The notes under the pieces are model-generated. The model did no database searches and was not told where the DNA came from. It saw only the letters and a program-made list of their open reading frames with translations. Of a stretch of 64,000 nucleotides of DNA, positions 13,101-62,562 are shown piece after piece; positions within the stretch are counted from its first letter, which is position 1; each line of letters opens with the position of its first letter. A program made the position numbers and the translations under genes. The stretch comes from Euprymna scolopes (taxonomy: Eukaryota): NCBI GenBank assembly GCA_053919585.1, contig CM132803.1, one strand, 5' to 3'.

Positions 13101-13253
13101 ATTATGGCCAGGGGATTCTATACACCAAATATTTCACAAAACAATAACAACAAAGAGTCTGTGACAGAAGATAATAACGTTTGTTATACAAGTCTCTTGT
13201 CAACAGGAAATATTTATAGAAATCCAAGACCTTTACCCCCAGTACCTCACTAA
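10115..13253 (+). pseudogene. Protocadherin pseudogene psiB: deleted large exon 10115-11107, exon-3 remnant ~12346-12478, exon 4 ~12991-13253
   Basis: Acceptor and leader nearly identical to P2, first ATG changed to ACG, frameshift in EC1, EC2, EC4 and EC5 deleted, donor CAG|GTTTG at 11107; exon-3 remnant has a stop; exon 4 still open. Confidence 0.88.
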
Positions 13254-14169
13254 AAAAATTTTTTTATCACTATTTGGACAAAATGCATTATTACTACTAC
13301 ATATAATTTCATAAAAAAAGAAATAGAGTCCCATAACAACAAAACATTTCACACATATAATTGAATCATATAAATTAAAATGTTGAATAATGAAATTATA
13401 CTTTAGTATTTTATAACAATAACAATTAAAATTATTAGACAATAACTTGTACACTTTTATAAAATATTGAGTACACTTATTGCTTTATTGATTCTGGTCT
13501 ATACTAAAATGGATGACTATTTGAGAATGTCAGGTGCTGTATGTGCTTTCCACTTATGTCAGCACTGTTTCCAGTCATCCTGGATTTCTCCTTGCCACTG
13601 GAGTTAAGCAGTGCTGATTCAGGAGAGTATGGTTAGAGATTACACAACCCTTGCTTCACAATTACATGTGCAGGCACCTTTACAGACGGTATCCATCACC
13701 TCTCAAGACTGAACCCTTATTATTATGATGATCATCATCATTATTATAGTATCTATTTCAAAATATACATTCAAATAAAAGATTTTAATTCAATTTTCAA
13801 CAATTTCTAAAAATTTACATTTTTAGACTGAAAATTATTTGTAAATTTGAAATCCATTTTCATTGAAAAACAAATCTAATAAAACACTGTCAATGAAATT
13901 CTCCAATGAATTTAAACTAAGACAATTGCACTGTAATATATATAAGCTGATAATTATTTAAAACAAGAACAAAACATACTCACATATTTACAAGTTTATT
14001 TTATCCACAGATTTTCAAGCTGTAATTGGTATAAATTGTTGTACATTTTTTTATATGCATCTTGACACAAAGACCTATTCCTACACAGTCGTTGAGATAA
14101 AGGCTTTTCAAATATAGATAGAGAGAAAGTAGCAAATGATTTAGTATGAATAACCAAACATACTGAAAT

Positions 14170-16331: not shown

Positions 16332-18818
16332 ATGATAAAATTGAATTCATCAGATTCTTTCCAGAAGCAATCATACATAAAAATGATAGTATTAACATTT
16401 ATTTTGATATTTCTACACATTTGTCATGGTGTGGATTTATCATTTAAAGTTGAAGAAGGCAAAAGTCCTGGCACTTACCTCGGAGACATTGCTGCCGATT
16501 CTAATGTGATGGATGATGTGGCCATACAAGATCAAAATCTCATTGCATTCAGTCTTATGGAACAGGATGGAACAAGCAGCTCTCCATTATTCCGAATTTC
16601 TAAAAATACAGGAAAACTTTATACAGCACAAACATTGGATGCAGAATCATTGTGTACTTCCAACAAAGAATGTTTTGTGATGGTTGATGTTGCTGTACAA
16701 AAATCAAAAAGAATCATGAAGATTTTAGAAATTAAAGTAATAATTCAGGATGTAAATGACCATCAGCCTGAATTTCCTGATAAACAAGTAAACATTGAAT
16801 ATTCAGAGGATGTAGTTCCAGGAACAAAGGTATCAATTCCAAACGCCATTGATAAAGACGTAAGTCAGAAGAATTCTCTTATTACATATTCTTTAAAAAA
16901 ACTGAAGGAAGAACCATTTCAATTGTCAATATCTAAAAAGGTTGATGGAACATCAGACCTTAGTATAACATTAGAAAAAAGACTTGACCGAGAAGTTAAA
17001 GGTTCTTTTATGATTCGAATAATTGCAAAAGATGGAGGATCTCCTCCAAAAGAAAGTATTCTCTTGGTACATATTACTGTAACTGATGTCAATGATAATC
17101 CTCCTGTTTTTTCTCAAAGCGTCTACAATGTAACAATAAAAAACAAACCAAGTGAAACTTCTTCTATTGCGACTTTATCTGCCACAGATTTAGATTCTGG
17201 TAAAAATGGAAGAGTCACTTATCATTTCAGTACAAAAACATCTGATGTTGCTAAAAGTCATTTTAAATTAAATCAACAAACTGGACAAATTTTCTTAGAA
17301 AAGAAATTTACTTTGAGTAATGTATTAACACATAATTTGTATGTTGAAGCTAAAGATGGGGGCATACCACCATTAAATTCACTTGCAATGGTTTTGGTTA
17401 ATGTAATCAATCAACAAAACAATCCACCAACAATTCATCTAAAATTCCTGTCAGCATCAGGAAAAGATTCAACATCAGTTTCTGAAGACATTGAGGTGGG
17501 AAGTTCCATTGCATATGTAAAAGTGACTGATCATGATGTTGGACAAAATGGAGAAGTGAGTTGCAATCTGCATTATGATAAATTTAAACTACAAAGTCTC
17601 GACACTAAGAAATACCAAGTAATTGTGAAAAAAGCATTGGATAGAGAAAGAGAGGCAAAGCATGAAATTATCATCAGCTGTCAAGATAAAGGATCTCCTC
17701 CACTGCAAAGTAAGAGTAAGTTCTCCATCAAAGTCACCGATGTGAATGATGTAAGGCCACAGTTCTCTATGGAGACATTTAAGTTCTTGATTGAAGAGAA
17801 TGAGAAGTCGAGATTTTCTGTTGGCTTCATCAATGCAACAGACCCAGACCTGGGAGTTGGAGGGAAACTCACCTATTCTCTGCTCACAAATAACAAACAG
17901 TTTTTACCTTTCAAAATCAAAGATGATGGCATGATTTCAGCCATTATGTCACTGGATCATGAGTTTCAAAACATTTACAAGTTTCAAGTATTTGTGAAAG
18001 ATAATGGAATCCCATCTCTCAATAATACAGTCAACGTCATTGTTGAAGTGACTGATAAAAATGATAATGCTCCGTATTTTACATTTCCCAGTGTCAATCC
18101 TTATAACATGGATGTTGTATATTACCGGCATCATTCAAAGAACATCACTTGTGTAAAGGCAGCTGATGGAGATAGTCAAGAGAATGCATTTCTAAAATAT
18201 GAAATAATCAGAGGCAATGACAAGCAGATGTTCACCATCAACCAGTACACTGGTTTGTTAACTTTCAATCGGGTGCTTGCGCAACAAGATGCTGGTTCCT
18301 ATGAGCTAGTGTTTGTTGTCAAGGATAGTGGTAGTCCAGTTCTATCAGCAACAACTAGTATGTTTTTCACTGTGACTGTAAGCAACAAGACATCAGAAAT
18401 GCTAAGTGCCGTTCATACAATCACTGAAGATAAAGTTGATCTTACATCAGTCATTATTATTACGGTTGTAGCAGTGACCGTAGCAGTCATCATTACTGCT
18501 TCAATCTCGGTATGTATCATTCGCTGTAATGATCAGAGAAATGTCACATATGCCCATGCAATGGCACCAACCAATGTGGGTGTTGTTGGTCCAAGTGGCA
18601 GATATATGAGTGATCAGAGACATTTGATGTGTCCTTCAAAGCAGGGAATATCTTGGCCAACTGCTGTCAATGTAAACCAAAGTCAAACTGATAAAATAAG
18701 AAATGCACACATAAACCAAACCAGCAGAGAAGCCAATCCTCTAGAAAAGCTTCCCAGTCAACAACAAAGATCAGCCTCTTTACCACAAACTCAAACCAGG
18801 ATACATAACGAACAACAG
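16332..18818 (+). CDS. Protocadherin P2 large exon (signal peptide, EC1-EC6, TM); start may be ATG 16383
   Basis: Acceptor ttcAG at 16329; 6 cadherin repeats, EC1 Cys-X5-Cys; donor CAG|GTATTT at 18818. Confidence 0.95.
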
Positions 18819-19843
18819 GTATTTACAAACTAATTTTTATGTTATTTTTTAAATCTTTTTAGTGGTGCACTTTGTATATTTTTATTTATTACACATAATA
18901 TTAACTTCAAAGAATTCAATATTCCTTTTTATGTTTTTTACTATATACTTTTCAAATGCTGAAAATGATTACTAATTTTATTCAACTTTTTACAACCTGC
19001 TTTTTAACATTAGTCTACCTTCACTCTAAAATTGCACTGCATTAGCAACTATATTGTATTCTATATATTGTAATAATATGTGGTATATATGTTTATAGAT
19101 TTACACAAATTAATTCAAATTATAAATTCATCAAAACATATTTTTCATAGCCAATATAGTGATCTTTTAAAGAATAAAAACACCAACAATTATTAATAAA
19201 ATTTTATTTTATTGTCAGACATTTTTATAATTAGTTAAAAAGAAAAATTGAATAAAGAAATTTAAACAAAAGGCACAACAATTTTATATTATGATATTGT
19301 TAATTTTCAATTTATTGTGTTGTTCAGAAAGTTGATTGATTGTAGCAGTTGGGTCTTTAAACTATACATATAACTGTTATAATTTTGGTATGACTGATAT
19401 ATTGTCATAACTTGCAATGCAGTTACCTTTGGTAGATACATCTTTTATTTTGTCAAACATATTGCCAAATGTGGACAACCAAAAACTGCAGTTTTTTTTA
19501 AAAATCACAAATGAAGTTTAAAATTAAATAAAGTAACTGACAAATTTATCAGACTATACTAAGATATGATTAATATAAAGAAAAGGGGTTAAAGGGTATT
19601 ATATATTTGTTTTATTCACTTCATATTAGGCCGAATTTAAAAAAAAAAAAGTCTATATATGAAAATATGAATCATCTGCCTGGATCATATGTTAAATATA
19701 TTATTCAGCATGTAACAGACAGATGAGAAGTTTTGTTTTATTGTTAAATATTTGTTGCTTCTACGTTTCTGTGCAAATGATGGCCTGTTTACATAAATAT
19801 GTAAGAGATAATTTCTACAATATATAAATAGGAATGTATAGAT

Positions 19844-24652: not shown

Positions 24653-24918
24653 ATGTTTACACTTCCCAATACTGCAATTCTCCATCAAAACATAGAGGAC
24701 AGTCATCACAAGAAACAGAGATGAGACCATTGGGACAGACTGTCAACTATCCAAGTGATACAACTATTGTAGCCAGGGGATTCTATACACCAAGTCTTTC
24801 ACAAAACAATGACAACAAAGACTCTGTGGCAGAGGATAGTAATTCTTCTGATACAAGTCTGCCATCAACAGGAAATATTTATAGAAACCCAAGACCCTTA
24901 CCACCAGTTCCTCATTAA
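24653..24918 (+). CDS. P2 terminal exon 4
   Basis: tacAG acceptor in phase 1; VYTSQYCNSPSK...RNPRPLPPVPH*. Confidence 0.9.
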
Positions 24919-26607: not shown

Positions 26608-29079
26608 ATGATGACACAGGAATTCCTATTGATAATCAAAAGTATGTTGCTACAAATGTGTCTCTTAATTTATTGTGTAGACTTTTCTTACTGTGTTGAC
26701 CTGACTTTCAAAGTAGAAGAAGGTAAAAGTCCTGGCACTTACCTTGGAGACATTGCTGCCGATTCTAATGTGATGGATGATGTGGCCATACAAGATCAAA
26801 ATCTCATTGCATTCAGTCTTATGGAACAGGATGGAACAAGCAGTTCTCCATTATTCCGGATTTCTAAAAATACAGGAAAACTCTATACAGCACAAACATT
26901 GGATGCTGAATCTCTGTGTACTTATGGAAAAGAATGTTTCTTAATGGTTGATGTTGCGGTTCAAAAATCTAAAAGAATTATGAAGATTTTAGAAATCAAA
27001 GTAATAATTGAAGATGTAAATGATCATCAACCAGAATTTCCGGATAAACAAGTTAATATTGAGTTTGATGAAGATGATGGCAAAGGAGTGAAACGTATGA
27101 TCTCAAATGCAATAGATAAAGATATTGGACGCATTAATTCTCAGATTACATACGAGTTAAAAAAATATAAAAATGAACCATTTGATTTATCAGTCTCTAA
27201 AAATGTGGACGGAACAGCTGATCTTTACATTATTCTGAAAGAAAGATTAGATAGAGAAGTGAAAGAAAGCTACATGGTAAAAGTTATTGCTAAAGATGGC
27301 GGATCTCCTTCTAAACAAAGTATTTTAGATGTTCACATTTCAGTTACAGATATGAATGATAATCCTCCTGTCTTTTCACAAAATCTTTATAATGTCACAA
27401 TCAAAAATGAACCAAGTGAAACTTCTTCAATTGCAACTTTATCTGCCACAGATTTAGATTCTGGTAAAAATGGAAGAGTCACTTATCATTTCAGTACAAA
27501 AACATCGGATGTTGCTAAAAGTCATTTTAAATTAAATCAACAAACTGGACAGATTTTCTTAGAAAAGAAATTTACATTGAATAATATATTAATACATAAT
27601 TTGTATGTTGAAGCACAAGATCAAGGAAATCCTCCATTAACAGCAAAGTCAATGGTATTAGTCAATGTGAACAACCAACAGAATAACCCTCCAATGATTC
27701 ATCTCAAGTTCCTGTCAGCATCTGGAAAAGATTCAACATCAGTTTCTGAAAACATTGAGGTGGGAAGTTCTATTGCATATGTAAAAGTGACTGATCATGA
27801 TGTTGGACAAAATGGAGAAGTGAGTTGCAATCTGCATTATGATAAATTTAAACTACAAAGTCTCGACACTAAGAAATACCAAGTAATTGTGAAAAAAGCA
27901 TTGGATAGAGAAAGAGAGGCAAAGCATGAAATTATCATCAGCTGTCAAGATAAAGGATCTCCTCCACTGCAAAGTAAGAGTAAGTTCTCCATCAAAGTCA
28001 CCGATGTGAATGATGTAAGGCCACAGTTCTCTATGGAGACATTTAAGTTCTTGATTGAAGAGAATGAGAAGTCGAGATTTTCTGTTGGCTTCATCAATGC
28101 AACAGACCCAGACCTGGGAGTTGGAGGGAAACTCACCTATTCTCTGCTCACAAATAACAAACAGTTTTTACCTTTCAAAATCAAAGATGATGGCATGATT
28201 TCAGCCATTATGTCACTGGATCATGAGTTTCAAAACATTTACAAGTTTCAAGTATTTGTGAAAGATAATGGAATCCCATCTCTCAATAATACAGTCAACG
28301 TCATTGTTGAAGTGACTGATAAAAATGATAATGCTCCGTATTTTACATTTCCCAGTGTCAATCCTTATAACATGGATGTTGTATATTACCAGCATCATTC
28401 AAAGAACATCACTTGTGTAAAGGCAGCTGATGGAGATAGTCAAGAGAATGCATTTCTAAAATATGAAATAATCAGAGGCAATGACAAGCAGATGTTCACC
28501 ATCAACCAGTACACTGGTTTGTTAACTTTCAATCGGGTGCTTGCGCAACAAGATGCTGGTTCCTATGAGCTAGTATTTGTTGTCAAGGATAGTGGTAGCC
28601 CAGTTCTATCAGCAACAACTAGTATGTTTTTCACTGTCACTGTAAGCAACAAGACATCAGAAATGCTAAGTGCCGTTCATACAATCACTGAAGATAAAGT
28701 TGATCTTACATCAGTCATTATTATTACAGTTGTAGCAGTGACCGTAGCAGTCATCATTACTGCTTCAATCTCGGTATGTATCATTCGCTGTAATGATCAG
28801 AGAAATGTCACATATGCCCATGCAATGGCACCAGCCAATGTGGGTGTTGTTGGTCCAAGTGGCAGATATATGAGTGATCAGAGACATTTGATGTGTCCTT
28901 CAAAGCAGGGAATATCTTGGCCAACTGCTGTCAATGTAAACAAAAGCCAAGCAGATAAAATAAGAAGTGCACATATTAACCAAACCAACAGAGAATCTAA
29001 TCCTCTTGAAAAGCTTCCCAGTCAGCAACAAAGATCAGCTTCCTTACCTCATACTGAAACAAATTACAATGAACAACAG
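26608..29079 (+). CDS. Protocadherin P3 large exon
   Basis: Acceptor at 26593; 6 EC plus TM; donor CAG|GTAAGT at 29079. Confidence 0.95.
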
Positions 29080-30586
29080 GTAAGTCTTAACCTCTGTTTA
29101 CATTATTTTTTATGATAATTCTTTATAAAGAATGTCAAAGTTTTAGTTTCATGTTTACAAGAAACTTATGAATGAAATGTTTCTTATTTTAAATTTCGAT
29201 ATCAAGTGAAACAATAATGAGCTGGCAAATCCATTTAATATTACACAAAAAATATGCCCATATTATGCTCGTGGTAATGTTGGAAAAGAATATATCAGCT
29301 TTGGAATGTGTGTTGTGTGGTTTCTGCCTTAGCTGTACACACACACACACAGATAACTACTCTTTTATATAATCGACTAATACGGTTATCTGGGAACATA
29401 AACAACAAAATAGAAAAGTTAAAAAGCATGTGCAACATCCTTCTATTAAATCCTCTGTTTTTCTGCTCTTCTCCTTTCAATATCCTCCTTTTCTCTCTCA
29501 CCCCGTATCACGTTTTCTCTGACAAATTGATGAATTATTACATAATATTAAAATTTGTCCTAACCGTACATGACCTCCACTGGCTTATTCTAATAACCCT
29601 CAGAAGAATGAATATTAAAAGAAATGTGCCTATACTTTACCCAAGGCAATAATGAAAAACAAAAATACAATATACTTTTAAAATTGTTTTTAATTTTCTT
29701 TTTATTTATCAGATAGTTACATAATACAAAACAGTGGGAGTTTTCCCTTTTTTCTTAGCATATTTTATAGTTTAGATTTTTTTTTCACCCTAAATTAAAA
29801 TATAACAATTTTTTTATAGGTCTAGAGTGTGGATTTGTAGATTCAAGTAATTAACAACTAGCTTACTTGAAAAATGTTTGCTACTTCAAATATTTGAAAT
29901 AAAAATTTTTCATAATTAAATTTTGCCATAGCTTTTTTCACATTTATTCATATAGACATAAACATTTTGTTGAATTTTTATATAAATTCATTTTTTTAAT
30001 ATGGCTGTAAAGAAAGAAATAATAAACAATATTCGTAAACAGAAATATTTATTAAATCAAAATTAAAGCAATCATTGAATAAAAATATAATAAAGAATAG
30101 TTAATGAATAAAATGCTCAGCATGAAACCGTTACTTACTTAATGAATGTGTTTCACATAAACAAATACGTTTTTATAAACTTAAAAATATTTCTATTTCA
30201 TCAATGATAACAGATTTTAGTAACAAAGGTAATATTTTCACATAAAATATGATCTTACTGCATTTGTTGATCATCTTTGGACAGATTTGTCTGTATTTGT
30301 CTTAAACATAAATACATATATAATCACCATTTAAAAATTGTCTTTTTATCATTCATTAATATTTTATAGATTTGATTTCAAAGATTCGAATTTTTATCAT
30401 TTTAATTCATCAGCTGTATAAATGTAAAAAAACAAAAATATGCTTAGAATAAAACCTTTCGATTAATATTATGAATGTTTTTTTTTTAAATTTTTTAAAT
30501 CAGCTTCACTTAACTTAATAATCATACATTTGTTTGATGTATGTTCGTAAACATTTTTATAAACTTAAAAATTCTCTACTCAGCAG

Positions 30587-35875: not shown

Positions 35876-38329
35876 ATGTTTATCACAGAGATGTCATTAT
35901 CCATTTATGTATTATTCCTTATTCTGGCCATATCTAAAGGTGCAGATCTGACATTTAAAGTAGAAGAAGGCAAAAGTCCTGGCACTTACCTTGGAGACAT
36001 TGCTGCCGATTCTAATGTGATGGATGATGTGGCCATACAAGATCAAAATCTCATTGCATTCAGTCTTATGGAACAGGATGGAACAAGCAGCTCTCCATTA
36101 TTCCGGATTTCTAAAAATACAGGAAAACTTTATACAGCACAAACATTGGATGCCGAGTCACTATGTACTTCCAACAAAGAATGTTTTGTGATGGTTGATG
36201 TTGCTGTACAGAAATCTAAAAGAATAATGAAGATATTAGAAGTAAAAGTTAATGTACAAGATGTGAATGATCATCAACCAGAATTTCCTGACAAACAAGT
36301 TAACATTGAATTTTCTGAAAGGGATGCAAAAGGGACAAAATTATCGATTCCAAACGCCATTGATAAAGATGTAAGTCAGAAGAATTCCCTTATTACATAT
36401 TCTTTAAAAAAACTGAAGGAAGAACCATTTCAATTGTCAATATCTAAAAAGGTTGATGGAACATCAGACCTTAGTATAACATTAGAAAAAAGACTTGACC
36501 GAGAAGTGAAAGATTCTTTTATGATTCGAATAATTGCAAAAGATGGAGGATCTCCTCCAAAAGAAAGTATTCTCTTGGTACATATTACTGTTACTGATGT
36601 CAATGATAATCCTCCTGTTTTTTCTCAAAGCGTCTACAATGTAACAATAAAAAACAAACCAAGTGAAACTTCTTCTATTGCAACTTTATCTGCCACAGAT
36701 TTAGATTCTGGTAAAAATGGAAGAGTCACTTATCATTTCAGTACAAAAACGTCTGATGTTGCTAAAAGTCATTTTAAATTAAATCAACAAACTGGACAGA
36801 TTTTCTTAGAAAAGAAATTTACACTAAGTAATGTATTAACACATAATTTGTATGTTGAAGCTAAAGATGGAGGAATCCCACCATTAAATTCACTTGCAAT
36901 GGTTTTGGTTAATGTAATTAATCAACAAAATAACCCACCAACAATTCATCTAAAATTCCTGTCAGCATCCGGAAAAGATTCAACATCAGTTTCTGAAAAC
37001 ATTGAGGTGGGAAGTTCCATTGCATATGTAAAAGTGACTGATCATGATGTTGGACAAAATGGAGAAGTGAGTTGCAATCTGCATTATGATAAATTTAAAC
37101 TACAAAGTCTCGACACTAAGAAATACCAAGTAATTGTGAAAAAAGCATTGGATAGAGAAAGAGAGGCAAAGCATGAAATTATCATCAGCTGTCAAGATAA
37201 AGGATCTCCTCCACTGCAAAGTAAGAGTAAGTTCTCCATCAAAGTCACCGATGTGAATGATGTAAGGCCACAGTTCTCTATGGAGACATTTAAGTTCTTG
37301 ATTGAAGAGAATGAGAAGTCGAGATTTTCTGTTGGCTTCATCAATGCAACAGACCCAGACTTGGGAGTTGGAGGGAAACTCACCTATTCTCTGCTCACAA
37401 ATAACAAACAGTTTTTACCTTTCAAAATCAAAGATGATGGCATGATTTCAGCCATTATGTCACTAGATCATGAGTTTCAAAACATTTACAAGTTTCAAGT
37501 ATTTGTGAAAGATAATGGAATCCCATCTCTCAATAATACAGTCAACGTCATTGTTGAAGTGACTGATAAAAATGATAATGCTCCGTATTTTACATTTCCC
37601 AGTGTCAATCCTTATAACATGGATGTTGTATATTACCGGCATCATTCAAAGAACATCACTTGTGTAAAGGCAGCTGATGGAGATAGTCAAGAGAATGCAT
37701 TTCTAAAATATGAAATAATCAGAGGCAATGACAAGCAGATGTTCGCCATCAACCAGTACACTGGTTTGTTAACTTTCAATCGGGTGCTTGCGCAACAAGA
37801 TGCTGGTTCCTATGAGCTAGTGTTTGTTGTCAAGGATAGTGGTAGTCCAGTTCTATCAGCAACAACTAGTATGTTTTTCACTGTGACTGTAAGCAACAAG
37901 ACGTCAGAAATGCTAAGTGCCGTTCATACAATCACTGAAGATAAAGTTGATCTTACATCAGTCATTATTATTACGGTTGTAGCAGTGACCGTAGCTGTTA
38001 TCATTACTGCTTCAATCTCGGTATGTATCATTCGCTGTAATGACCAGAGAAATGTCACATATGCTCATGCAATGGCACCAGCCAATGTGGGTGTTGTTGG
38101 TCCAAGTGGCAGATATATGAGTGATCAAAGACATTTGATGTGTCCTTCAAAGCAGGGAATATCTTGGCCAACTGCTGTCAATGTAAACCAAAATCAATCA
38201 GATAAAGTAAGAAATGCACACATAAACCAAACTAACAGAGAATCTCATCCTACAGAAAAGCTTCCCAGTCAACAACAGAGATCAACCTCCCTTCCTCATA
38301 ACCAGACTTCAGCAAGTATTGAATCACGG
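35876..38329 (+). CDS. Protocadherin P4 large exon
   Basis: Acceptor at 35830; 6 EC plus TM; donor CGG|GTAAGT at 38329. Confidence 0.95.
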
Positions 38330-38821
38330 GTAAGTACTTTTTTTAAACAAATATTTTATTCATGCAATAGTTTTTTTAAAAACAAAATGTTTTAAATGGA
38401 AAGGCTCCTGGCTGAAGTAATGATGCAAAACAATTACTCTGCATCACCACTAGTGAGCTAACCCAGTTTACAAGTCTCATACTTTAACCAAAATGAAATC
38501 CTGCTAATCTACACAAGAAAAAACTCCAGAAGTTTCTACTGCTACTATAGTAATAATAAATCTGTATAATAAAAGATTTATTTATTTTTTTTTTATGTTT
38601 ATATTTAGTTTGAATTAAAGTCATTATTATCCTTATTTTATTACATTCATCAAGAATCACGAGGAAAGATATTATTGAAAATTCTTAATATTATTCAACT
38701 AATATTCATTTATTCAGTTTTTCAGTTTTAGATAAAATTCTTCAAGAACTTTTTAATGTTTTTATCTTGCATGTAATTTTTTTGGTAAATAATCATTTGA
38801 TGTTTATTTTTCTTATTATAG

Positions 38822-41574: not shown

Positions 41575-41610
41575 AGTTTTAAATGTCTGATATGTATTAA
41601 TACTAACTTG

Positions 41611-44217: not shown

Positions 44218-46653
44218 ATGATACACATAGGAATTCTATTCTCTATTTTGCATATTGTATTTACTGCGGATCTGACAGTGAAAGTTGAAGAAGGGAAAAG
44301 TCCTGGCACTTACCTTGGAGACATTGCTGCCGATTCTAATGTGATGGATGATGTGGCCATACAAGATCAAAATCTCATTGCATTCAGTCTTATGGAACAG
44401 GATGGAACAAGCAGCTCTCCATTATTCCGGATTTCTAAAAATACAGGAAAACTTTATACAGCACAAACATTGGATGCAGAGTCATTGTGCACATTCTACA
44501 AAGAATGTTTTCTAATGGTTGATGTTGCTGTTCAAAAATCTAAAAGGATTATGAAAATACTTGAAGTAAAAGTAATAATACAAGACATTAATGATCATCA
44601 ACCAGAATTTCCTGATAAACAAGTGAACATAAAATTTTCTGAGGGAGATATCACAGGAACAAAAATATCAATTCCTAATGCTGTTGACAAAGATATTGGA
44701 ATTATCAATTCTCAGATTACTTATGAACTAAAGAAATATAAAGATGAACCATTTGATTTGTCCGTTTCCAAAAATATTGATCAAACTGCTGATCTCTATA
44801 TTATTCTGAAAGAAAGATTGGACAGAGAAGTGAAAGAAAGCTACATGGTAAAAGTCATTGCTAAAGATGGTGGATCTCCTTCTAAACAAAGTATTTTAGA
44901 TGTTCACATTTCAGTTGCAGATGTGAATGATAATCCTCCTGTTTTCTCACAAAATCTTTATAATGTCACAATCAAAAATGAACCAAGTGAAACTTCTTCT
45001 ATTGCAACTTTATCTGCCACAGATTTAGATTCTGGAAAAAATGGAAGAGTCACTTATCATTTCAGTACAAAAACATCTGATGTTGCGAAAAGTCATTTTA
45101 AATTAAATCAACAAACTGGACAGATTTTCTTAGAAAAGAAATTTACATTGAGTAACATGCTGACTTATAACTTATTTGTGGAGGCTACTGATGGTGGCAA
45201 TCCTCCCTTAACAGCTAAATCAATGATCATTGTAAATGTTGTTAATAATCAAAATAATCCACCAACAATTCACTTAAAATTTTTGGCAGCATCTGGAAAA
45301 GATTCAACATCTGTTTCTGAAAATATTGAGGTGGGAAGTTCCATTGCATATGTAAAAGTGACTGATCATGATGTTGGACAAAATGGAGAAGTGAGTTGCA
45401 ATCTGCATTATGATAAATTTAAACTACAAAGTCTCGACACTAAAAAATACCAAGTAATTGTGAAAAAAGCATTGGATAGAGAAAGAGAGGCAAAGCATGA
45501 AATTATCATCAGCTGTCAAGATAAAGGATCTCCTCCACTGCAAAGTAAGAGTAAGTTCTCCATCAAAGTCACCGATGTGAATGATGTAAGGCCACAGTTC
45601 TCTATGGAGACATTTAAGTTCTTGATTGAAGAGAATGAGAAGTCGAGATTTTCTGTTGGCTTCATCAATGCAACAGACCCAGACCTGGGAGTTGGAGGGA
45701 AACTCACCTATTCTCTGCTCACAAATAACAAACAGTTTTTACCTTTCAAAATCAAAGATGATGGCATGATTTCAGCTATTATGTCACTGGATCATGAGTT
45801 TCAAAACATTTACAAGTTTCAAGTATTTGTGAAAGATAATGGAATCCCATCTCTCAATAATACAGTCAACGTCATTGTTGAAGTGACTGATAAAAATGAT
45901 AATGCTCCGTATTTTACATTTCCCAGTGTCAATCCTTATAACATGGATGTTGTATATTACCGGCATCATTCAAAGAACATCACTTGTGTAAAGGCAGCTG
46001 ATGGAGATAGTCAAGAGAATGCATTTCTAAAATATGAAATAATCAGAGGCAATGACAAGCAGATGTTCACCATCAACCAGTACACTGGTTTGTTAACTTT
46101 CAATCGGGCACTTGCGCAACAAGACGCTGGTTCCTATGAGCTAGTGTTTGTTGTCAAGGATAGTGGTAGTCCAGTTCTATCAGCAACAACTAGTATGTTT
46201 TTCACTGTGACTGTAAGCAACAAGACATCAGAAATGCTAAGTGCCGTTCATACAATCACTGAAGATAAAGTTGATCTTACATCAGTTATTATTATTACGG
46301 TTGTAGCAGTGACTGTAGCAGTCATCATTACTGCTTCAATCTCGGTGTGTATCATTCGCTGTAATGATCAGAGAAATGTCACATATGCCCATGCAATGGC
46401 ACCAGCTAATGTAGGTGTTGTTGGTCCAAGTGGCAGATATATGAGTGATCAGAGACATTTGATGTGTCCTTCAAAGCAGGGAATATCTTGGCCAACTGCT
46501 GTCAATGTAAACAAAGGCCAAACAGACAAAACAAGAAATGCACACATAAACCAAACCAGCAGAGAATCCCATCCTCTAGAAAAGCTTCCCAGTCAGCAAC
46601 AGAGATCAGCTTCTTTACCTCAGAATCAAACACAGCTTCAAGATTCTCACCAG
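44218..46653 (+). CDS. Protocadherin P5 large exon
   Basis: Acceptor at 44185; 6 EC plus TM; donor CAG|GTAGTA at 46653. Confidence 0.95.
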
Positions 46654-47825
46654 GTAGTACCTTCTATTTGTACAATTATATTTCATATTAACAATTGTAA
46701 ATTTATCTATTCATATAAATAAATGCTAGAATTTTAATAATATTTATAGTACTTTTATCGTACATATTCTAATTAAATATTTTATTATAAAATTAAATCT
46801 GTATTCTTAAGTTTATAAATTTTTGTTCTTCCTTTTTCATTAATACATTTTTAAATTTCTTCAGTTCATTTTTGTACTATCTGTATTTAACTTTTACTTG
46901 ATGCATTATAATTTAAAAAAAATTGATCTCGTTTTTGTATTTATTTATAAATTGAAAGTATTTTAGAATCAGTACAATATTAAAATCCTCAGTGTCTTCA
47001 CTTTTAATTGGTTACTGTATTAGAATTTTAATTGTCCTTTAAATCCTTCTCCTACTACTCATATATGTATTGTTTCCTCTTGCTTAACCAGAATTTACAT
47101 AATAAAATTGTACTTACTGTCTTTATGTTGGAAAAATTAATCAGAATTAAGAATCAGGTTATTTTAGGTATCAGAATTTTTTTTAGCCTAATTTCAAATT
47201 CCAAAAATGCTTCTTTCAATCTTTTTTTTGTTTAAAACTTACTTTTCTATTGCTTATACTAATGATAAAATGATAAATATTTATGGTTTTTAAACTACTA
47301 GTAAAACTAAAATCTCTATACCTAAATAAAAAATATATAAATCTATATAAAAAGGAATTTATGTAAAAATGGTATTGAAGAAATGGTTCCCACAAAAATG
47401 ATATATAAAATATTTATGTCAGTAAAGGTTCTTTTCAAATCTGAAAAATTATAGAACTGGAAATTATCTTCAGTTTTTTTGTAGTACTAAACACAACAGA
47501 TGGCCTAAATATTTGTGCGACAAAACACTAGTCTGTCACAAAGCTGCAATTCTCAATGCCTTCGTAGCATGTTTAGCAAAATAATGTTTGAGCTACACAT
47601 GACATTATTTAGAAGGTTAGCATCTATAACGGATATTAAACTAGGTCATATACGGTAAAACAGCTGAAACATTGTGATTATAACTATGATAAGAACACTT
47701 CTAGTATGAATACATATAATGTAAAATAGAATTTCTCATCTACAAAATTCACAAGAAGACATTTGAAAGTTTTAATATTCATATAATTACAAAAGTGAAT
47801 TTAAAGTTATATCATTTCTTTTTAG

Positions 47826-51096: not shown

Positions 51097-53535
51097 ATGT
51101 TGATTCAAATATGGATTCTGCTCTCATTCCTACACATTTGTAATAGTGTAGATTTGACATTCAAAGTTGAAGAAGGTAAAAGTCCTGGCACTTACCTTGG
51201 AGACATTGCTGCCGATTCTAATGTGATGGATGATGTGGCCATACAAGATCAAAATCTCATTTCATTCAGTCTTATGGAACAAGATGGAACAAGCAGCTCT
51301 CCATTATTCCGGATTTCTAAAAATACAGGAAAACTTTATACAGCACAAACATTGGATGCTGAATCTCTGTGTACTTATGGAAAAGAATGTTTCTTAATGG
51401 TTGATGTTGCAGTTCAGAAATCTAAAAGGATTATGAAAATTTTAGAAATCAAAATAATAATTGAGGATGTAAATGATCATCAACCAGAATTTCCTGATAA
51501 ACAAGTGACCGTTCTGTTTGAAGAAAATTATAAAAAAGGAACACAAGTTTTAATTCCAAATGCTATTGACAAAGATATTGGAGATATCAATTCACAAATA
51601 ACTTATGATCTTAAAAAATATAAAGATGAACCATTCGGGTTATCTGTTTCAAAAAATGTTGATGGCACATCAGACTTATATATGATACAAAAGGAGAGCT
51701 TAGACAGAGAAGTGAAAGAAAGCTACATGGTAAAAGTCATTGCTAAAGATGGTGGATCTCCTTCTAAACAAAGTATTTTAGATGTTCACATTTCAGTTGC
51801 AGATGTGAATGATAATCCTCCTGTCTTCTCACAAAATCTTTATAATGTCACAATCAAAAATGAACCAAGTGAAACTTCTTCTATTGCAACTTTATCTGCC
51901 ACAGATTTAGATTCTGGTAAAAATGGAAGAGTCACTTATCATTTCAGTACAAAAACATCTGATGTTGCTAAAAGTCATTTTAAATTAAATCAACAAACTG
52001 GACAGATTTTCTTAGAAAAGAAATTTACATTGAGTAACATGCTGACTTATAACTTATTTGTGGAGGCTACTGATGGTGGCAATCCTCCCTTAACAGCTAA
52101 ATCAATGATCATTGTAAATGTTGTTAATAATCAAAATAATCCACCAACAATTCATCTAAAATTTTTGGCAGCATCTGGAAAAGATTCAACATCTGTTTCT
52201 GAAAACATTGAGGTGGGAAGTTCCATTGCATATGTAAAAGTGACTGATCATGATGTTGGACAAAATGGAGAAGTGAGTTGCAATCTGCATTATGATAAAT
52301 TTAAACTACAAAGTCTCGACACTAAGAAATACCAAGTAATTGTGAAAAAAGCATTGGATAGAGAAAGAGAGGCAAAGCATGAAATTATTATCAGCTGTCA
52401 AGATAAAGGATCTCCTCCACTGCAAAGTAAGAGTAAGTTCTCCATCAAAGTCACCGATGTGAATGATGTAAGGCCACAGTTCTCTATGGAGACATTTAAG
52501 TTCTTGATTGAAGAGAATGAGAAGTCAAGATTTTCTGTTGGCTTCATCAATGCAACAGACCCAGACCTGGGAGTTGGAGGGAAACTCACCTATTCTCTGC
52601 TCACAAATAACAAACAGTTTTTACCTTTCAAAATCAAAGATGATGGCATGATTTCAGCCATTATGTCACTGGATCATGAGTTTCAAAACATTTACAAGTT
52701 TCAAGTATTTGTGAAAGATAATGGAATCCCATCTCTCAATAATACAGTCAACGTCATTGTTGAAGTGACTGATAAAAATGATAATGCTCCGTATTTTACA
52801 TTTCCCAGTGTCAATCCTTATAACATGGATGTTGTATATTACCGGCATCATTCAAAGAACATCACTTGTGTAAAGGCAGCTGATGGAGATAGTCAAGAGA
52901 ATGCATTTCTAAAATATGAAATAATCAGAGGCAATGACAAGCAGATGTTCGCCATCAACCAGTACACTGGTTTGTTAACTTTCAATCGCGTGCTTGCGCA
53001 ACAAGATGCTGGTTCCTATGAGCTAGTGTTTGTTGTCAAGGATAGTGGTAGCCCAGTTCTATCAGCAACAACTAGTATGTTTTTCACTGTCACTGTAAGC
53101 AACAAGACATCAGAAATGCTAAGTGCCGTTCATACAATCACTGAAGATAAAGTTGATCTTACATCAGTCATTATTATTACGGTTGTAGCAGTGACTGTAG
53201 CAGTCATCATTACTGCTTCAATCTCGGTATGTATCATTCGCTGTAATGACCAGAGAAATGTCACATATGCTCATGCAATGGCACCAGCCAATGTGGGTGT
53301 TGTTGGTCCAAGTGGCAGATATATGAGTGATCAGAGACATTTGATGTGTCCTTCAAAGCAAGGAATATCTTGGCCAACTGCTGTCAATGTAAACCAAAGT
53401 CAAACAGATAAAATAAGAAATGCACATATCAACCAAACCAGCAGAGAATCCAATCCCACAGAAAAGCTTCCCAGTCAGCAACAAAGATCAGCTTCTCTGC
53501 CACAGGCTAAAACCCAATTACAAGCTGAATCTAAA
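51097..53535 (+). CDS. Protocadherin P6 large exon
   Basis: Acceptor at 51046; 6 EC plus TM; donor AAA|GTAAGT at 53535. Confidence 0.95.
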
Positions 53536-53870
53536 GTAAGTAATATATTTTTCCTATATATACATCTTTTATGTGTGATATCTTGATTGATAGAATAGTT
53601 TAAAAACTTATTTTATTATTTTGTTGTATAAATTCAAATATTTTAGAACTCTCTTTTTATAGAGATATACATTTTACTTGGGTAATGTTTTATTGAAGTA
53701 TTACAGATATAATTTTATTTTAATGTTTGTATTTCTTTATTATATTATCAATAGACTTCTTTATTAAATTATCCTTCCTGAATTTTTCCTCAATAAGTAT
53801 TTAATTTTGGTTATTTCATAGTTGCAATCCATAACAAATTTTCAATATAATTTTTTTTTCTATTCAACAG

Positions 53871-59190: not shown

Positions 59191-61647
59191 ATGATATTCG
59201 TCACAAAAATGTTAACACAAACATTCTTCCTGCTTTTGATACTACATTCTGTTTACTGTATAGATCTGACATTCAAAGTCGAAGAAGGCAAAAGTCCTGG
59301 CACTTACCTTGGAGACATTGCCGCCGATTCTAATGTGATGGATGATGTGGCCATACAAGATCAAAATCTCATTGCATTCAGTCTAATGGAACAGGATGGA
59401 ACAAGCAGCTCTCCATTATTCCGGATTTCTAAAAATACAGGAAAACTTTATACAGCACAAACATTGGATGCTGAATCGCTGTGTACATTTAATAAGGAAT
59501 GTTCTCTCATGATAGATATTGCAGTACAAAAATCCAAAAGAATCATGAAGATTTTAGAAATTAAAATCATCATACTTGATGTAAATGACCATCAACCAGA
59601 ATTTCCTGATAAAAAAATAACTATTGAATTTTCTGAAGATATTGTCATGGGAACCAAAATATCAATCCCTAATGCCATTGATAAAGACATTGGTGTTATC
59701 AACTCTCAGATAACTTATGAATTGAAAAAATACAAAAATGAACCATTTGGTCTGTCTGTTTCTAAAAATGTAGACAGAACAGCTGATCTCTATATTATTC
59801 TGAAAGAAAGATTGGACAGAGAAGTTAAAGGAAGTTATATAGTAAAAGTCATTGCTAAAGATGGTGGATCTCCTTCTAAAAAAAGTATTTTAGATGTACA
59901 TATTTTAGTTGCAGACGTAAATGATAATCCTCCTGTCTTCTCACAAAATCTTTATAATGTCACAATCAAAAATGAACCAAGTGAAACTTCTTCTATTGCA
60001 ACTTTATCTGCCACAGATTTAGATTCTGGTAAAAATGGAAGAGTCACTTATCATTTCAGTACAAAAACATCTGATGTTGCTAAAAGTCATTTTAAATTAA
60101 ATCAACAGACTGGACAGATTTTCTTAGAAAAGAAATTTACTTTAAGTAATATGCGGACATGTAATTTATATGTTGAAGCTAAAGATGGTGGAAATCCACT
60201 TTTAACTGCTAAATCAATAGTTCTTGTCAATGTAATCAATCAACAAAATAATCCTCCAATCATTCATCTCAAGTTCCTGTCAGCATCCGGAAAAGATTCA
60301 ACATCAGTTTCGGAAGACATTGAGGTGGGAAGTTCTATTGCATATGTAAAAGTGACTGATCATGATGTTGGACAAAATGGAGAAGTGAGTTGCAATCTGC
60401 ATTATGATAAATTTAAACTACAAAGTCTCGACACTAAGAAATACCAAGTAATTGTGAAAAAAGCATTGGATAGAGAAAGAGAGGCAAAGCATGAAATTAT
60501 CATCAGCTGTCAAGATAAAGGATCTCCTCCACTGCAAAGTAAGAGTAAGTTCTCCATCAAAGTCACCGATGTGAATGATGTAAGGCCACAGTTCTCTATG
60601 GAGACATTTAAGTTCTTGATTGAAGAGAATGAGAAGTCGAGATTTTCTGTTGGCTTCATCAATGCAACAGACCCAGACCTGGGAGTTGGAGGGAAACTCA
60701 CCTATTCTCTGCTCACAAATAACAAACAGTTTTTACCTTTCAAAATCAAAGATGATGGCATGATTTCAGCCATTATGTCACTGGATCATGAGTTTCAAAA
60801 CATTTACAAGTTTCAAGTATTTGTGAAAGATAATGGAATCCCATCTCTCAATAATACAGTCAACGTCATTGTTGAAGTGACTGATAAAAATGATAATGCT
60901 CCGTATTTTACATTTCCCAGTGTCAATCCTTATAACATGGATGTTGTATATTACCGGCATCATTCAAAGAACATCACTTGTGTAAAGGCAGCTGATGGAG
61001 ATAGTCAAGAGAATGCATTTCTAAAATATGAAATAATCAGAGGCAATGACAAGCAGATGTTCGCCATCAACCAGTACACTGGTTTGTTAACTTTCAATCG
61101 CGTGCTTGCGCAACAAGATGCTGGTTCCTATGAGCTAGTGTTTGTTGTCAAGGATAGTGGTAGCCCAGTTCTATCAGCAACAACTAGTATGTTTTTCACT
61201 GTCACTGTAAGCAACAAGACATCAGAAATGCTAAGTGCCGTTCATACAATCACTGAAGATAAAGTTGATCTTACATCAGTCATTATTATTACAGTTGTAG
61301 CAGTGACCGTAGCTGTTATCATTACTGCTTCAATCTCGGTATGTATCATTCGCTGTAATGATCAAAGAAATGTCACATATGCCCATGCAATGGCACCAGC
61401 CAATGTGGGTGTTGTTGGTCCAAGTGGCAGATATATGAGTGATCAGAGACATTTGATGTGTCCTTCAAAGCAGGGAATATCTTGGCCAACTGCTGTCAAT
61501 GTAAACCAAAGTCAAACAGATAAAATAAGAAATGCACTTGTCAACCAAACCAACAGAGAGTCCCATCCTCTAGAAAAGCTTCCAAGTCAGCAACAAAGAT
61601 CTGCTTCCTTGCCGCAGACACAGCGAGTTACACAGATAGCATCTCAG
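59191..61647 (+). CDS. Protocadherin P7 large exon; exons 3-4 not found in window
   Basis: Acceptor at 59144; 6 EC plus TM; donor CAG|GTAAAA at 61647. Confidence 0.94.
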
Positions 61648-62562
61648 GTAAAAGTTTTATATTTATTATTTATTTGTTTTTTTTTAAACAAAATTTTATT
61701 ATTATAAAAATAAATGATATTTTGGTAGTTCCATAATTCAGTAAAAATTTAAATTATTATATTCATATTTTATTGTTGTAAATAAATTTCTTCAAAGAAA
61801 TTAATTGCTATATAGAAATTTTGCTTTTTCATTTAGCTTAATAAAAACATACTAATCAGCAATTTACATTATAATACCATTCAATTTTGCAGCTAATTTT
61901 GACCTGTATACATTATGTGCATATAATTGTGTAGCAATTATATGCACATAATGTAATAAGATTTTTTAATAATTAGTAATAAGATTTTTTGTATTTTTTT
62001 TGTATTTAACATAACATATTACTGTTAATACATTAATTCTGAAAGCTATTCATGTATGGTGTTTAAAATTTTGAGTAAACTAAATCATATTCAGAGTACT
62101 GCAGTTTTTCTTTTTTTGGTTAATACATCTAAAAATTAATTTATATTGTTTTCTTATATCTTAGCAAAGATGAAACAATTCAAAGTAAAACCCTCTTCTG
62201 ATATATCTAAACTTACCTGCATAATATTAGCAATTTATAATTTTGTACACTTCAAATGTCAGATTATTTTAAACTGATCTTCATTACTTTATATCCATAT
62301 TTGTCCTTCTTGCATCATGTTGACAATGCACGGAATTTGTAGCAAAATCAAGGGAAGGTGGAATAAGAGTAAAAACTACTTGCCAAAATTCAACCCACAA
62401 CTATCTCTCAACCATTGTTAAGATAAATACTCTAGCAAAATTTCTTCACCCATTTTTTAGATAAAAGGATACAAATATGTTTTCTGAGAACTAGTGAGAT
62501 GCTTCAAGGATTTTCTTAATTAAAGCTCTATTAAAGCACACAATGAAACCACATACCGTACA

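What the first reader, a model, noticed from the sequence alone, without database searches (positions are those of the whole stretch)
16440..17445. Alternating constant and hypervariable bands within EC1-EC3
Seen (P2 coordinates): constant EC1 N-terminus (~16448-16642); variable from the Cys-X5-Cys loop through EC2; constant EC3 N-terminal half (~17148-17311); variable EC3 C-terminal ~45 aa. Loop variants are CTSNKEC, CTYGKEC, CTFYKEC and CTFNKEC. The start of EC2 is unique to each gene (YSEDVVPGT, FDEDDGKGV, FSERDAKGT, FSEGDITGT, FEENYKKGT, FSEDIVMGT). Established: Pcdh trans-dimers are antiparallel EC1:EC4 and EC2:EC3, with EC2-EC3 central to specificity. Inference: the variable bands are the recognition code on a fixed scaffold.
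Basis: partly seen in the sequence, partly recalled or inferred. Interest (0 to 1): 0.72.

Follow-up and report, generated by a model that had tools for sequence, protein, structure and literature searches.

The report
Gene-conversion banding in cephalopod protocadherin ectodomains
Six neighbouring cephalopod protocadherin (neuronal adhesion) genes alternate between stretches kept almost letter-identical by copying between the genes and old, divergent stretches that mostly match the surfaces vertebrate protocadherins use to recognise each other.

Summary
In P2 coordinates, 16462-16640 (EC1) and 17146-17311 (EC3) are nearly invariant among six tandem paralogs (pi 0.015). 16641-17145 and 17312-17451 are about 15 times more divergent (pi 0.22-0.25). 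All quoted loop and EC2-start variants are correct.

The constant bands are also identical at synonymous sites (dS 0.05-0.2, against 0.7-1.4 in the variable bands). They carry fixed differences from a second array of the same subfamily. In two sister arrays the same positions are variable. So they are tracts homogenised by gene conversion, not a scaffold held by protein constraint.

The variable bands are old cassettes under purifying selection (dN/dS 0.04-0.39) and are shared across arrays. By homology they cover most of the vertebrate trans-dimer surfaces: the EC2 A-B-E-D face, the EC3 F-G hairpin, and the E-F loops of EC1 and EC3. The EC3 C strand, the EC3 Phe-X-Phe loop and all of EC4 are constant, so the match is incomplete.

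This is the vertebrate pattern of region-restricted conversion, arisen independently and at sub-domain resolution. The scan had already noted the EC4-EC6 constant block on other DNA of this genome (s1-244837). No binding data exist.

The parts
16332..18833 (+). P2 large first exon as an ORF: signal peptide, EC1-EC6, transmembrane segment and proximal tail. The true exon probably ends at a CAG|GT donor at 18818/18819.
   Evidence: ORF list; six cadherin repeats in Pfam; donor-like sites in five of the six complete genes and in P1p (P7's was not located), after which the reading frames diverge (inferred).
16462..16640 (+). Constant island C1: EC1 from the A-B loop to just after strand E (aa 44-103).
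   Evidence: 8/179 polymorphic sites and pi 0.015; third-position pi 0.04; short-read word depth 280-810 against about 16-30 single-copy; strand map from the AF2 model.
16641..17145 (+). Variable band V1: EC1 E-F (Cys-X5-Cys) loop, strands F and G, EC1-2 linker, all of EC2, EC2-3 linker and EC3 strand A (aa 104-272).
   Evidence: 214/505 polymorphic sites and pi 0.22; dS 0.7-1.4 and dN/dS 0.04-0.39; single-copy read depth.
16791..16841 (+). Diversity hot spot within V1: EC2 strand A, A-B loop and strand B (aa 154-170). It is unique in each of 20 paralogs.
   Evidence: Highest entropy, up to 8 residues per site; pN/pS 0.4-1.2 against 0.05-0.25 elsewhere; gammaB interface positions 111, 125 and 128 map here.
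17146..17311 (+). Constant island C2: EC3 from the A-B loop to just after strand E, including the C strand and the helical Phe-X11-Phe loop (aa 273-326).
   Evidence: 8/166 polymorphic sites, no amino-acid change, dS 0.087; read word depth 100-570; strand map.
17312..17451 (+). Variable band V2: EC3 E-F loop, strand F, FG loop, strand G, EC3-4 linker and EC4 strand A (aa 327-373).
   Evidence: 66/140 polymorphic sites, pi 0.245, dS 1.1; gammaB position 294 maps to I345 in the FG loop.
17452..18680 (+). Constant block C3: rest of EC4, EC5, EC6, transmembrane segment and juxtamembrane region.
   Evidence: pi 0.013 and dS 0.049; read word depth about 330-390.
26608..29115 (+). P3, a paralog with the same band layout.
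35876..38395 (+). P4. It is near-identical to P2 in EC2 after aa 170 but differs in the EC2 start.
44218..46722 (+). P5. It shares the V2 cassette with P6.
51097..53586 (+). P6. It shares its Cys-X5-Cys loop cassette with P3 and its V2 cassette with P5.
59191..61707 (+). P7, a paralog with the same band layout.

Best explanation
The banding is a mosaic of evolutionary ages made by region-restricted gene conversion (concerted evolution) among tandem full-gene protocadherin duplicates of a coleoid cephalopod.

Three tracts are repeatedly copied between paralogs and so stay about 98.5% identical, synonymous sites included. They are EC1 strands B-E, EC3 strands B-E, and EC4 through the juxtamembrane region.

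The segments between them are ancient cassettes that escape array-wide homogenisation. They are the EC1 E-F disulfide loop with strands F and G, all of EC2, EC3 strand A, and the EC3 E-F loop with strands F and G. These are exchanged only occasionally, between particular gene pairs.

Inferred: the cassettes persist because they carry the isoform-specific part of an antiparallel EC1-4 trans interface (EC2 A-B-E-D face against EC3 F-G/FG loop; EC1 E-F loop against EC3 E-F loop). Conversion that erased them would be selected against. Sequence divergence may itself also block heteroduplex extension.

The conversion part is shown. The recognition part is inferred from homology to vertebrate structures.
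For: 1. Synonymous divergence is 0.05-0.09 in C2 and C3 (0.22 in C1 including its edges), against 0.7-1.4 in the variable bands. Third-position pi is 0.03-0.05 against 0.39-0.44.
2. A second array of the same subfamily (14 proteins from ENA assembly ERZ21867824; tandem spacing about 7.2 kb) has the same islands. It is uniform within itself and carries fixed differences from the window set, such as N92K, Q316E and about 20 residues in C3.
3. On constant-band columns the window genes form one clade (100/100). On variable-band columns they interleave with the other array, and the AU test rejects their monophyly (p = 1e-4, lnL difference 104).
4. Pair-specific conversion tracts occur inside the variable bands: P2-P4, P5-P6, P5-P7, P3-P6 and P6-P7, permutation p <= 0.0015. 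Synonymous divergence per segment differs between pairs.
5. Between repeat units only exon 1, exon 2 (82-90% identity), a short promoter piece and scattered repeats align. Homogenisation is therefore internal to the coding exon.
6. Public short-read contigs of the same coded organism confirm multi-copy constant bands, single-copy variable bands and the junctions.
7. Both small islands run from the A-B loop to 4-5 residues after strand E of their domain. This leaves strand A, the E-F loop and strands F and G variable. In solved protocadherin dimers EC1 and EC3 bind through the C-F-G face and EC2 through A-B-E-D.
8. Closely related organisms B and C hold P2-like V1 sequence at 97-99% identity, with 13 synonymous and 3 non-synonymous differences. 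That is the 'conserved in orthologs, diverse in paralogs' pattern.
9. There is a vertebrate precedent for per-domain dS differences caused by conversion.
Against: - No DNA of the second array could be fetched. The between-array test is therefore at protein level only, and it is unknown whether that array belongs to another species or to another locus.
- The interface mapping rests on sequence alignment to gammaB4 and on published descriptions. No dimer was modelled.
- The EC3 C strand, the EC3 Phe-X-Phe loop and all of EC4 are interface elements in vertebrates but are constant here.
- EC2 varies on both sheets about equally, as expected for an old tract rather than interface-focused selection.
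- dN/dS never clearly exceeds 1.
- No functional evidence exists that cephalopod protocadherins bind homophilically.
Confidence: 0.75

Rival explanations
1. Neutral barrier model. Gene conversion made the bands, but no selection for diversity is involved. Once segments had diverged by more than about 15-20%, mismatch rejection confines conversion to the islands that are still similar, which then perpetuate themselves.
For: - Band limits follow the linear sequence rather than 3D faces: the EC3 C strand and C-D loop are constant, and EC2 varies on both sheets.
- Sister arrays place their constant and variable limits elsewhere.
- dN/dS is below 1 throughout.
Against: - Both small islands start and end at structurally equivalent positions of EC1 and EC3.
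- The same limits are kept in two independently homogenising arrays.
- Conversion does occur inside the variable bands between particular pairs, so divergence is not an absolute barrier.
- The EC2 start has five- to ten-fold higher pN/pS than its surroundings.
Confidence: 0.17
2. The constant bands are a structural scaffold kept unchanged by purifying selection on the protein, and the variable bands are free or driven to change.
For: The islands hold strands B, D and E of the non-interface sheet in EC1 and EC3. No amino-acid change occurs in C2.
Against: - Synonymous sites are also nearly identical.
- There are fixed differences between arrays but none within them.
- The same positions are 27-68% divergent in sister arrays.
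Confidence: 0.03
3. Recent tandem duplication followed by rapid, positively selected divergence of recognition loops ('hypervariable' regions in an otherwise young array).
For: The constant blocks are very similar, the genes are evenly spaced in tandem, and the EC2 start is extremely diverse.
Against: - Variable bands are saturated at synonymous sites (dS 0.7-1.4) with dN/dS of 0.04-0.39.
- Variable cassettes are shared with another array, for example P6 with P0013 and P3 with P0011.
Confidence: 0.02
4. Synonymous-site constraint at the RNA level keeps the islands identical. An example would be double-stranded structures needed for the heavy A-to-I editing of cephalopod transcripts. The link between editing and sequence constraint is from my own knowledge and was not checked here.
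For: The one RNA run laid gave a single read.
Against: Constraint cannot produce differences that are fixed between two arrays yet absent within each. It also cannot explain why sister arrays vary at these positions.
Confidence: 0.02
5. Assembly or polishing artefact that collapsed similar paralog segments into identical sequence.
For: Tandem near-repeats are prone to such errors.
Against: - Short-read contigs from several coded organisms reproduce the P2 sequence. Contigs from a run of the same coded organism bridge the band junctions (that run may be the window's own source sample).
- Depth is multi-copy only in the constant bands.
- The same layout appears in 14 proteins of a separately deposited assembly.
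Confidence: 0.01

Closest known systems
Region-restricted gene conversion in vertebrate clustered protocadherins (Noonan et al. 2004; Etlioglu et al. 2016, PMC4978886)
   Same: Tandem paralogs. Low synonymous divergence where conversion homogenises (mostly EC5-6 and C-terminal parts) and high divergence in EC2-EC3, which carry trans specificity. dS is used as the read-out.
   Different: - It arose independently in cephalopods, in full-gene duplicates that each have their own downstream exon rather than variable exons spliced to shared constant exons.
- Homogenisation reaches EC4 and forms two 170-180-bp islands inside EC1 and EC3, so the resolution is sub-domain.
- The dS contrast is about 28-fold.
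- The island layout differs between arrays of the same genome or assembly.
Antiparallel EC1-4 trans dimers of clustered and delta-protocadherins (Nicoludis 2016 PMC5001838; Goodman 2016 PMC5106212; Cooper 2016 PMC5115871; Harrison 2020 PMC7082078)
   Same: - Six-EC architecture, with a Cys-X5-Cys loop in the EC1 E-F loop and a helical Phe-X-Phe loop in EC3.
- The predicted EC1-4 rod superposes on these structures (TM 0.7-0.8).
- EC2 and EC3 are the diversified part, while the EC1:EC4 part is largely invariant, as in the 'affinity versus specificity' division.
   Different: - No dimer is shown for the cephalopod proteins.
- EC4 is completely constant, and so is the EC3 Phe-X-Phe loop, which is a specificity element in alpha and gamma isoforms.
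- The EC3-EC4 linker reads NQQNN instead of DxNDN.
Cephalopod protocadherin expansions (Albertin et al. 2015; Styfhals 2019 PMC6339937; Albertin 2022 PMC9068888)
   Same: [quoted passage not shown] 'Homogenization through gene conversion' has been suggested from species-specific clades.
   Different: In the text read here, those papers treat conversion only at whole-gene tree level. No map of converted against unconverted segments within the ectodomain was found.
Segmental gene-conversion diversity systems with conserved anchors and variable cassettes (for example pilin pilE/pilS, chicken immunoglobulin pseudo-V genes); from my own knowledge
   Same: Alternating conserved blocks and variable cassettes. 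Cassettes are shared in a patchwork between copies.
   Different: Here the exchange is germline and evolutionary rather than somatic or programmed. Several tract ends lie inside V1 rather than at the islands.

Membership tests
Protocadherin (cadherin superfamily) | Six or seven tandem extracellular cadherin repeats encoded in one large exon | tested here: met
   Pfam PF00028 matches six stretches, E = 5.6e-79. The ORFs are uninterrupted at 829-839 aa.
Protocadherin (cadherin superfamily) | Disulfide Cys-X5-Cys loop in the E-F loop of EC1 | tested here: met
   C108-X5-C114. Both cysteines are invariant in 70 homologs. The loop lies between strands E and F of the model. The feature is described.
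Protocadherin (cadherin superfamily) | Extended EC1-4 rod like solved protocadherin ectodomains | tested here: met
   AF2 pLDDT 87. Foldseek top hits are delta2 and clustered protocadherin EC1-4 structures, E about 1e-40, TM 0.7-0.8. phmmer against PDB gives E = 3.7e-92 to 6vg1.
Vertebrate-type clustered protocadherin locus (alpha/beta/gamma) | Variable first exons spliced to shared constant exons | tested here: not met
   Each unit has its own copy of the next exon, 82-90% alike, for example 12970-13254, 24619-24925 and 32909-33222. Albertin 2022 states that cephalopods use full-gene duplicates.
Vertebrate-type clustered protocadherin locus (alpha/beta/gamma) | Orthology to the alpha, beta or gamma subfamilies | tested here: not met
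   Similarity to delta2 and to clustered structures is equal (27-34% identity).
Concerted evolution by gene conversion | Synonymous divergence much lower in the homogenised tracts than in the flanking parts of the same gene | tested here: met
   dS 0.049-0.22 against 0.72-1.38. Third-position pi 0.03-0.05 against 0.39-0.44.
Concerted evolution by gene conversion | Paralogs of one array group together in homogenised segments but interleave with another array in the other segments | tested here: met
   Clade support is 100/100 on constant columns. The AU test rejects the same clade on variable columns, p = 1e-4. This is protein level only.
Concerted evolution by gene conversion | Statistically supported pairwise conversion tracts | tested here: met
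   A Sawyer-type permutation test gives five pairs with p <= 0.0015.
Isoform-specific homophilic recognition code (as in vertebrate clustered protocadherins) | An antiparallel EC1-4 trans homodimer forms | not testable with these tools
   Only a monomer could be predicted. No experimental data on cephalopod protocadherin binding were found.
Isoform-specific homophilic recognition code (as in vertebrate clustered protocadherins) | Paralog-variable residues lie on the trans interface | tested here: inconclusive
   By homology:
- Variable here: the EC2 A/AB/B segment (gammaB 111, 125, 128), the EC3 FG loop (294), and the E-F loops of EC1 and EC3.
- Constant here: EC3 positions 253 and 257, the EC1 C strand (41), gammaB F86 (maps to I131) and all of EC4.
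- EC2 varies on both sheets.
Isoform-specific homophilic recognition code (as in vertebrate clustered protocadherins) | Interface residues conserved in orthologs but diversified in paralogs | tested here: inconclusive
   P2-like V1 contigs of two closely related organisms are 97-99% identical, with 13 synonymous and 3 non-synonymous differences. They are short contigs of uncertain orthology.

The most novel reading that the evidence does not exclude
The two roughly 170-bp islands are not passive leftovers. They would act as homology anchors, kept by selection, that frame the recognition segments (EC1 E-F/F/G plus EC2, and EC3 E-F/F/G) as exchangeable modules. Germline gene conversion could then reshuffle old cassettes among dozens of paralogs and create new binding specificities combinatorially. 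This would be an evolutionary analogue of segmental-conversion diversity systems, evolved independently of vertebrates. It would also define a minimal recognition code: P2 and P4 differ at only 13 residues in EC1-4, six of them in the EC2 A/A-B/B segment.
Probability: 0.18. Interest if true: 0.72.

Novelty: new variant of a known kind. Interest (0 to 1): 0.48.

Why it matters
Whether cephalopod protocadherins act as a neuronal recognition code like the vertebrate clustered genes is still an open question. No binding data were found in the papers searched here.

This array is a natural experiment. Conversion has erased almost all differences between paralogs except in a few defined segments, so the candidate specificity determinants are narrowed to about 215 residues. 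The sharpest hot spot is 15 residues at the start of EC2.

Near-isogenic natural pairs exist. P2 and P4 differ at 13 residues in EC1-4. P5 and P6 share the EC3 cassette. This makes homophilic specificity directly testable with a handful of constructs.

The finding also shows that the vertebrate association between conversion-free segments and the trans interface has arisen a second time, which argues that it is a consequence of how this adhesion system evolves.

Tried and rejected
- DNA of the closest related array (ENA ERZ21867824) and of a Logan transcript contig could not be fetched ('file too large'). The between-array concerted-evolution test therefore had to be done on proteins.
- Noonan et al. 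2004 (PMC353213) is not held. The vertebrate precedent is cited through Etlioglu 2016 and Styfhals 2019.
- Per-residue interface lists of the vertebrate structures exist only in figures. The supplements of Goodman 2016 hold none, and one paper search call failed on syntax. Mapping therefore used the residue pairs named in the text, the face description of Harrison 2020, the gammaB4 alignment and the DSSP strands of the model.
- The RNA run X21 gave one read on P2, so nothing can be said about expression or RNA editing.
- Organisms B and C are too close to A (2-3% divergence) for a between-species concerted-evolution test.
- Explanations rejected were protein-constraint scaffold, recent duplication with positive selection, RNA-level synonymous constraint and assembly artefact. 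See the rivals.
- Site-model dN/dS was not attempted. Six recombining sequences with saturated dS would give unreliable results.
Full report
**What is in the window**

The 64-kb window is AT-rich (GC about 23-35%). It carries six complete and one partial head-to-tail ORF of 829-839 residues on the + strand: P1p 72-1202, P2 16332-18833, P3 26608-29115, P4 35876-38395, P5 44218-46722, P6 51097-53586 and P7 59191-61707.

P2 has six cadherin repeats (Pfam PF00028, E = 5.6e-79). It matches solved protocadherin ectodomains by sequence, with E = 3.7e-92 to Xenopus Pcdh8.1 EC1-6 and 8e-90 to gammaB4.

An AlphaFold2 model of EC1-4, built on 70 homologs, has mean pLDDT 87. It superposes on delta2 and clustered protocadherin EC1-4 structures at TM 0.7-0.8.

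The named hits are cephalopod: Acanthosepion pharaonis at 59-64% and Octopus at 53%. Earlier notes of this scan call the genome squid/cuttlefish-like.

Each unit has its own copy of the next exon, for example 24619-24925 for P2, at 82-90% identity between units. This agrees with the published view that cephalopods use full-gene duplicates rather than shared constant exons.

**Check of the observation**

| Band | P2 coordinates | Polymorphic sites | Mean pairwise divergence |
|---|---|---|---|
| C1 | 16462-16640 | 8/179 | 0.015 |
| V1 | 16641-17145 | 214/505 | 0.22 |
| C2 | 17146-17311 | 8/166 (no amino-acid change) | 0.016 |
| V2 | 17312-17451 | 66/140 | 0.245 |
| C3 | 17452 to about 18680 | 37/1229 | 0.013 |

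Fisher's test of C1+C2 against V1+V2 gives p = 7e-44. The four Cys-X5-Cys variants and the six EC2 starts are as quoted.

Short-read contigs from a public run of the same coded organism (it may be the window's own source sample) bridge the signal-peptide|C1, C1|V1 and C2|V2 junctions of P2. Their summed word depth is about 16-30 over the upstream, signal-peptide and variable parts. It is 280-810 over C1, 100-570 over C2 and 330-390 over C3.

So the mosaic is real. The constant bands are shared by many more paralogs than the six in the window, roughly 15-40. The tool warns that this depth is not a copy number.

**What makes the bands**

The contrast is first of all one of synonymous divergence.

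- Nei-Gojobori dS is 0.049 in C3 and 0.087 in C2. It is 0.22 in C1 as first delimited with its edges.
- In the variable sub-bands dS is 0.72-1.38, which is saturated.
- Third-position diversity is 0.03-0.05 in the constant bands against 0.39-0.44 in the variable bands.
- dN/dS inside the variable bands is 0.04-0.39, so they are under purifying selection overall.

Protein-level constraint cannot remove synonymous differences. Positive selection cannot create them. The constant bands are therefore young and the variable bands old, within the same genes.

**Test against a second array**

A word-based search of 5.8 billion proteins found 14 members of the same subfamily in one ENA assembly. They lie in tandem about 7.2 kb apart. 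They have the same C1, C2 and C3 bands and are uniform among themselves.

They carry fixed differences from all six window genes, including N92K in C1, Q316E in C2, and about 20 substitutions plus a one-residue insertion in C3.

In the variable bands the cassette types cross the two sets:
- P6 resembles P0013 (FEENYKKG).
- P3 resembles P0011 (DDGKGVKR).
- P2 resembles P0001.
- P4 resembles P0014.
- A second EC2/EC3 haplotype is shared by P3, P5, P6, P7 and P0013-15.

Maximum-likelihood trees make this formal. On constant-band columns the window genes are one clade (100/100) with branch lengths of about 0.003. On variable-band columns they interleave with the other set, and the AU test rejects their monophyly (p = 1e-4, lnL difference 104).

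This is the classical signature of concerted evolution.

**Conversion inside the variable bands**

A Sawyer-type permutation test finds pair-specific tracts inside the variable bands:
- P2-P4, 16879-16989 and beyond
- P5-P6, 17279-17432
- P5-P7
- P3-P6, 16643-16689
- P6-P7

All have p <= 0.0015. Synonymous divergence per segment differs sharply between pairs. P2 and P4, for example, have pS 0.06 in EC2 after aa 170, but 0.57-0.63 before it and 0.28 in V2.

Between repeat units, only exon 1, exon 2, a short promoter piece and scattered repeats align at all. The homogenised tracts end inside the coding exon on both sides.

**Are the constant bands a scaffold?**

Two other arrays in the same ENA assembly were examined, with members on contigs of 250,921 and 237,501 bp. 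They have no C1 or C2 island.

- The EC1 B-C region is 67-68% divergent among their members.
- The EC3 B-E region is 27-43% divergent.
- Their constant block begins only at about aa 442 or about aa 600.

The fold therefore tolerates variation there, and the islands are specific to this subfamily.

**Structural position of the bands**

DSSP on the model shows that both small islands run from the A-B loop to 4-5 residues after strand E of their domain. These are EC1 aa 44-103 and EC3 aa 273-326. Strand A, the E-F loop, strand F, the FG loop and strand G are left variable. EC2 is variable throughout. EC4 is constant except for its A strand.

Harrison et al. 2020 describe the contacts in solved trans dimers:
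- The C-F-G face of EC1 binds the A-B-E-D face of EC4.
- The A-B-E-D face of EC2 binds the C-F-G face of EC3.
- The EC3 FG loops pair at the dimer centre.
- The disulfide E-F loop of EC1 can touch the E-F loop of the partner's EC3.

These are the Cys-X5-Cys loop, the EC2 start and the C-terminal third of EC3.

Residue pairs named by Goodman 2016 and Nicoludis 2016 were mapped through the gammaB4 alignment:
- 111 maps to E156, 125 to P170 and 128 to I173. All lie in the EC2 hot spot.
- 294 maps to I345 in the variable FG loop.
- 253 and 257 map to T301 and V306, in the helical Phe-X11-Phe loop of the constant island C2.
- 41 maps to S83 and F86 maps to I131. Both are constant.

Entropy over 20 paralogs peaks in EC2 strand A, the A-B loop and strand B (aa 154-168, up to eight residues per site). 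There are further peaks at aa 179, 191 and 197 of EC2 and at 349 in EC3. Within EC2 the two sheets are about equally variable.

pN/pS at the EC2 start is 0.4-1.2, against 0.05-0.25 elsewhere. It is raised, but not demonstrably above 1.

Contigs of two closely related organisms carry P2-like V1 sequence at 97-99% identity, with 13 synonymous and 3 non-synonymous differences. This hints that each cassette is conserved between species.

**Explanation**

Shown: the alternation is produced by region-restricted gene conversion among tandem paralogs.

Inferred: conversion is excluded from the segments that carry isoform-specific trans contacts. These are mainly EC2 against the EC3 F-G hairpin, plus the two E-F loops. 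Array-wide homogenisation there would merge recognition identities.

Because EC4 is constant, the EC1:EC4 contact can supply affinity only. This matches the 'affinity versus specificity' division proposed for vertebrate clustered protocadherins.

A neutral alternative is that divergence itself blocks heteroduplex extension. It explains the linear shape of the bands and the different layouts in sister arrays, and it cannot be excluded. Three points count against it as the sole cause:
- The island limits are structurally equivalent in EC1 and EC3.
- The limits persist in two independently homogenising arrays.
- Conversion between particular pairs does occur inside the variable bands.

**Comparison with what is known**

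The closest precedent is region-restricted conversion in vertebrate protocadherin clusters. There dS is lowest in EC5-6 and highest in EC2-3, and this has been linked to trans specificity.

For cephalopods, the papers found mention conversion only as a possible cause of species-specific clades. No sub-domain map was found.

The scan itself had already recorded the EC4-EC6 constant block, both in this window and in another protocadherin array 48 Mb away in the same genome. The two small islands inside EC1 and EC3 are the new detail.

The locus is not a member of the vertebrate clustered family. It has no shared constant exons and no orthology to alpha, beta or gamma. It appears to work like one at the level of sequence evolution.

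**Verdict**

- Observation: confirmed.
- Interpretation: partly supported. The 'recognition code' reading is plausible by homology. The 'fixed scaffold' reading is wrong as to cause.
- Novelty: a new variant of a known kind.
- Interest: moderate. The main value is that it reduces the candidate specificity determinants of an untested invertebrate adhesion code to a few short cassettes, and it supplies natural near-isogenic pairs for experiments.

Noticed in passing
window 10191-11082: Degenerate protocadherin remnant between P1p and P2. One piece matches the EC1 constant island at 91-95%, a short piece matches the EC2/EC3 border, and about 490 bp match the 3' part of exon 1 at 83-85%, with large internal deletions. 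It is likely a pseudogene of the kind Albertin 2022 calls 'fragmentary reading frames'.
   Followed up: partly
window 12970-13254, 24619-24925, 32909-33222, 41288-41581, 49128-49410, 55611-55913: Each unit has its own small downstream exon-like block, about 5.8-6.3 kb after exon 1. It is only 82-90% identical between units, so it is not homogenised like EC4-EC6.
   Followed up: partly
window 17409-17429 (P2 aa 360-366) and 17298-17327 (aa 323-332): The EC3-EC4 linker reads NQQNNPP instead of the calcium-binding DxNDNxP. The EC3 E-F loop lacks the LDRE-type acidic motif (it reads FTLSN). This is conserved across 70 homologs, so the EC3-EC4 junction may bind little or no calcium.
   Followed up: no
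window 18819 (P2), 29080 (P3), 38330 (P4), 46654 (P5), 53536 (P6), 1146 (P1p): Donor-like sites (CAG|GTAAGT type) lie just where the paralog reading frames stop being alignable. The real first exon therefore ends about 15-70 bp before the ORF stop. P7's site was not located.
   Followed up: partly
window 17487-17507 (P2 aa 386-392): Read contigs of organisms A and C carry an alternative 'SEGIKIG' version of this EC4 segment. It is the same variant seen in half of the ENA-array proteins. So the start of the EC4-EC6 constant block has at least two alleles circulating among paralogs.
   Followed up: no
window 17310-17450, P2 versus P4: P2 and P4 encode identical V2 peptides but differ at 9 synonymous sites (pS 0.28). 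This points to purifying selection on this EC3 cassette rather than recent conversion.
   Followed up: partly
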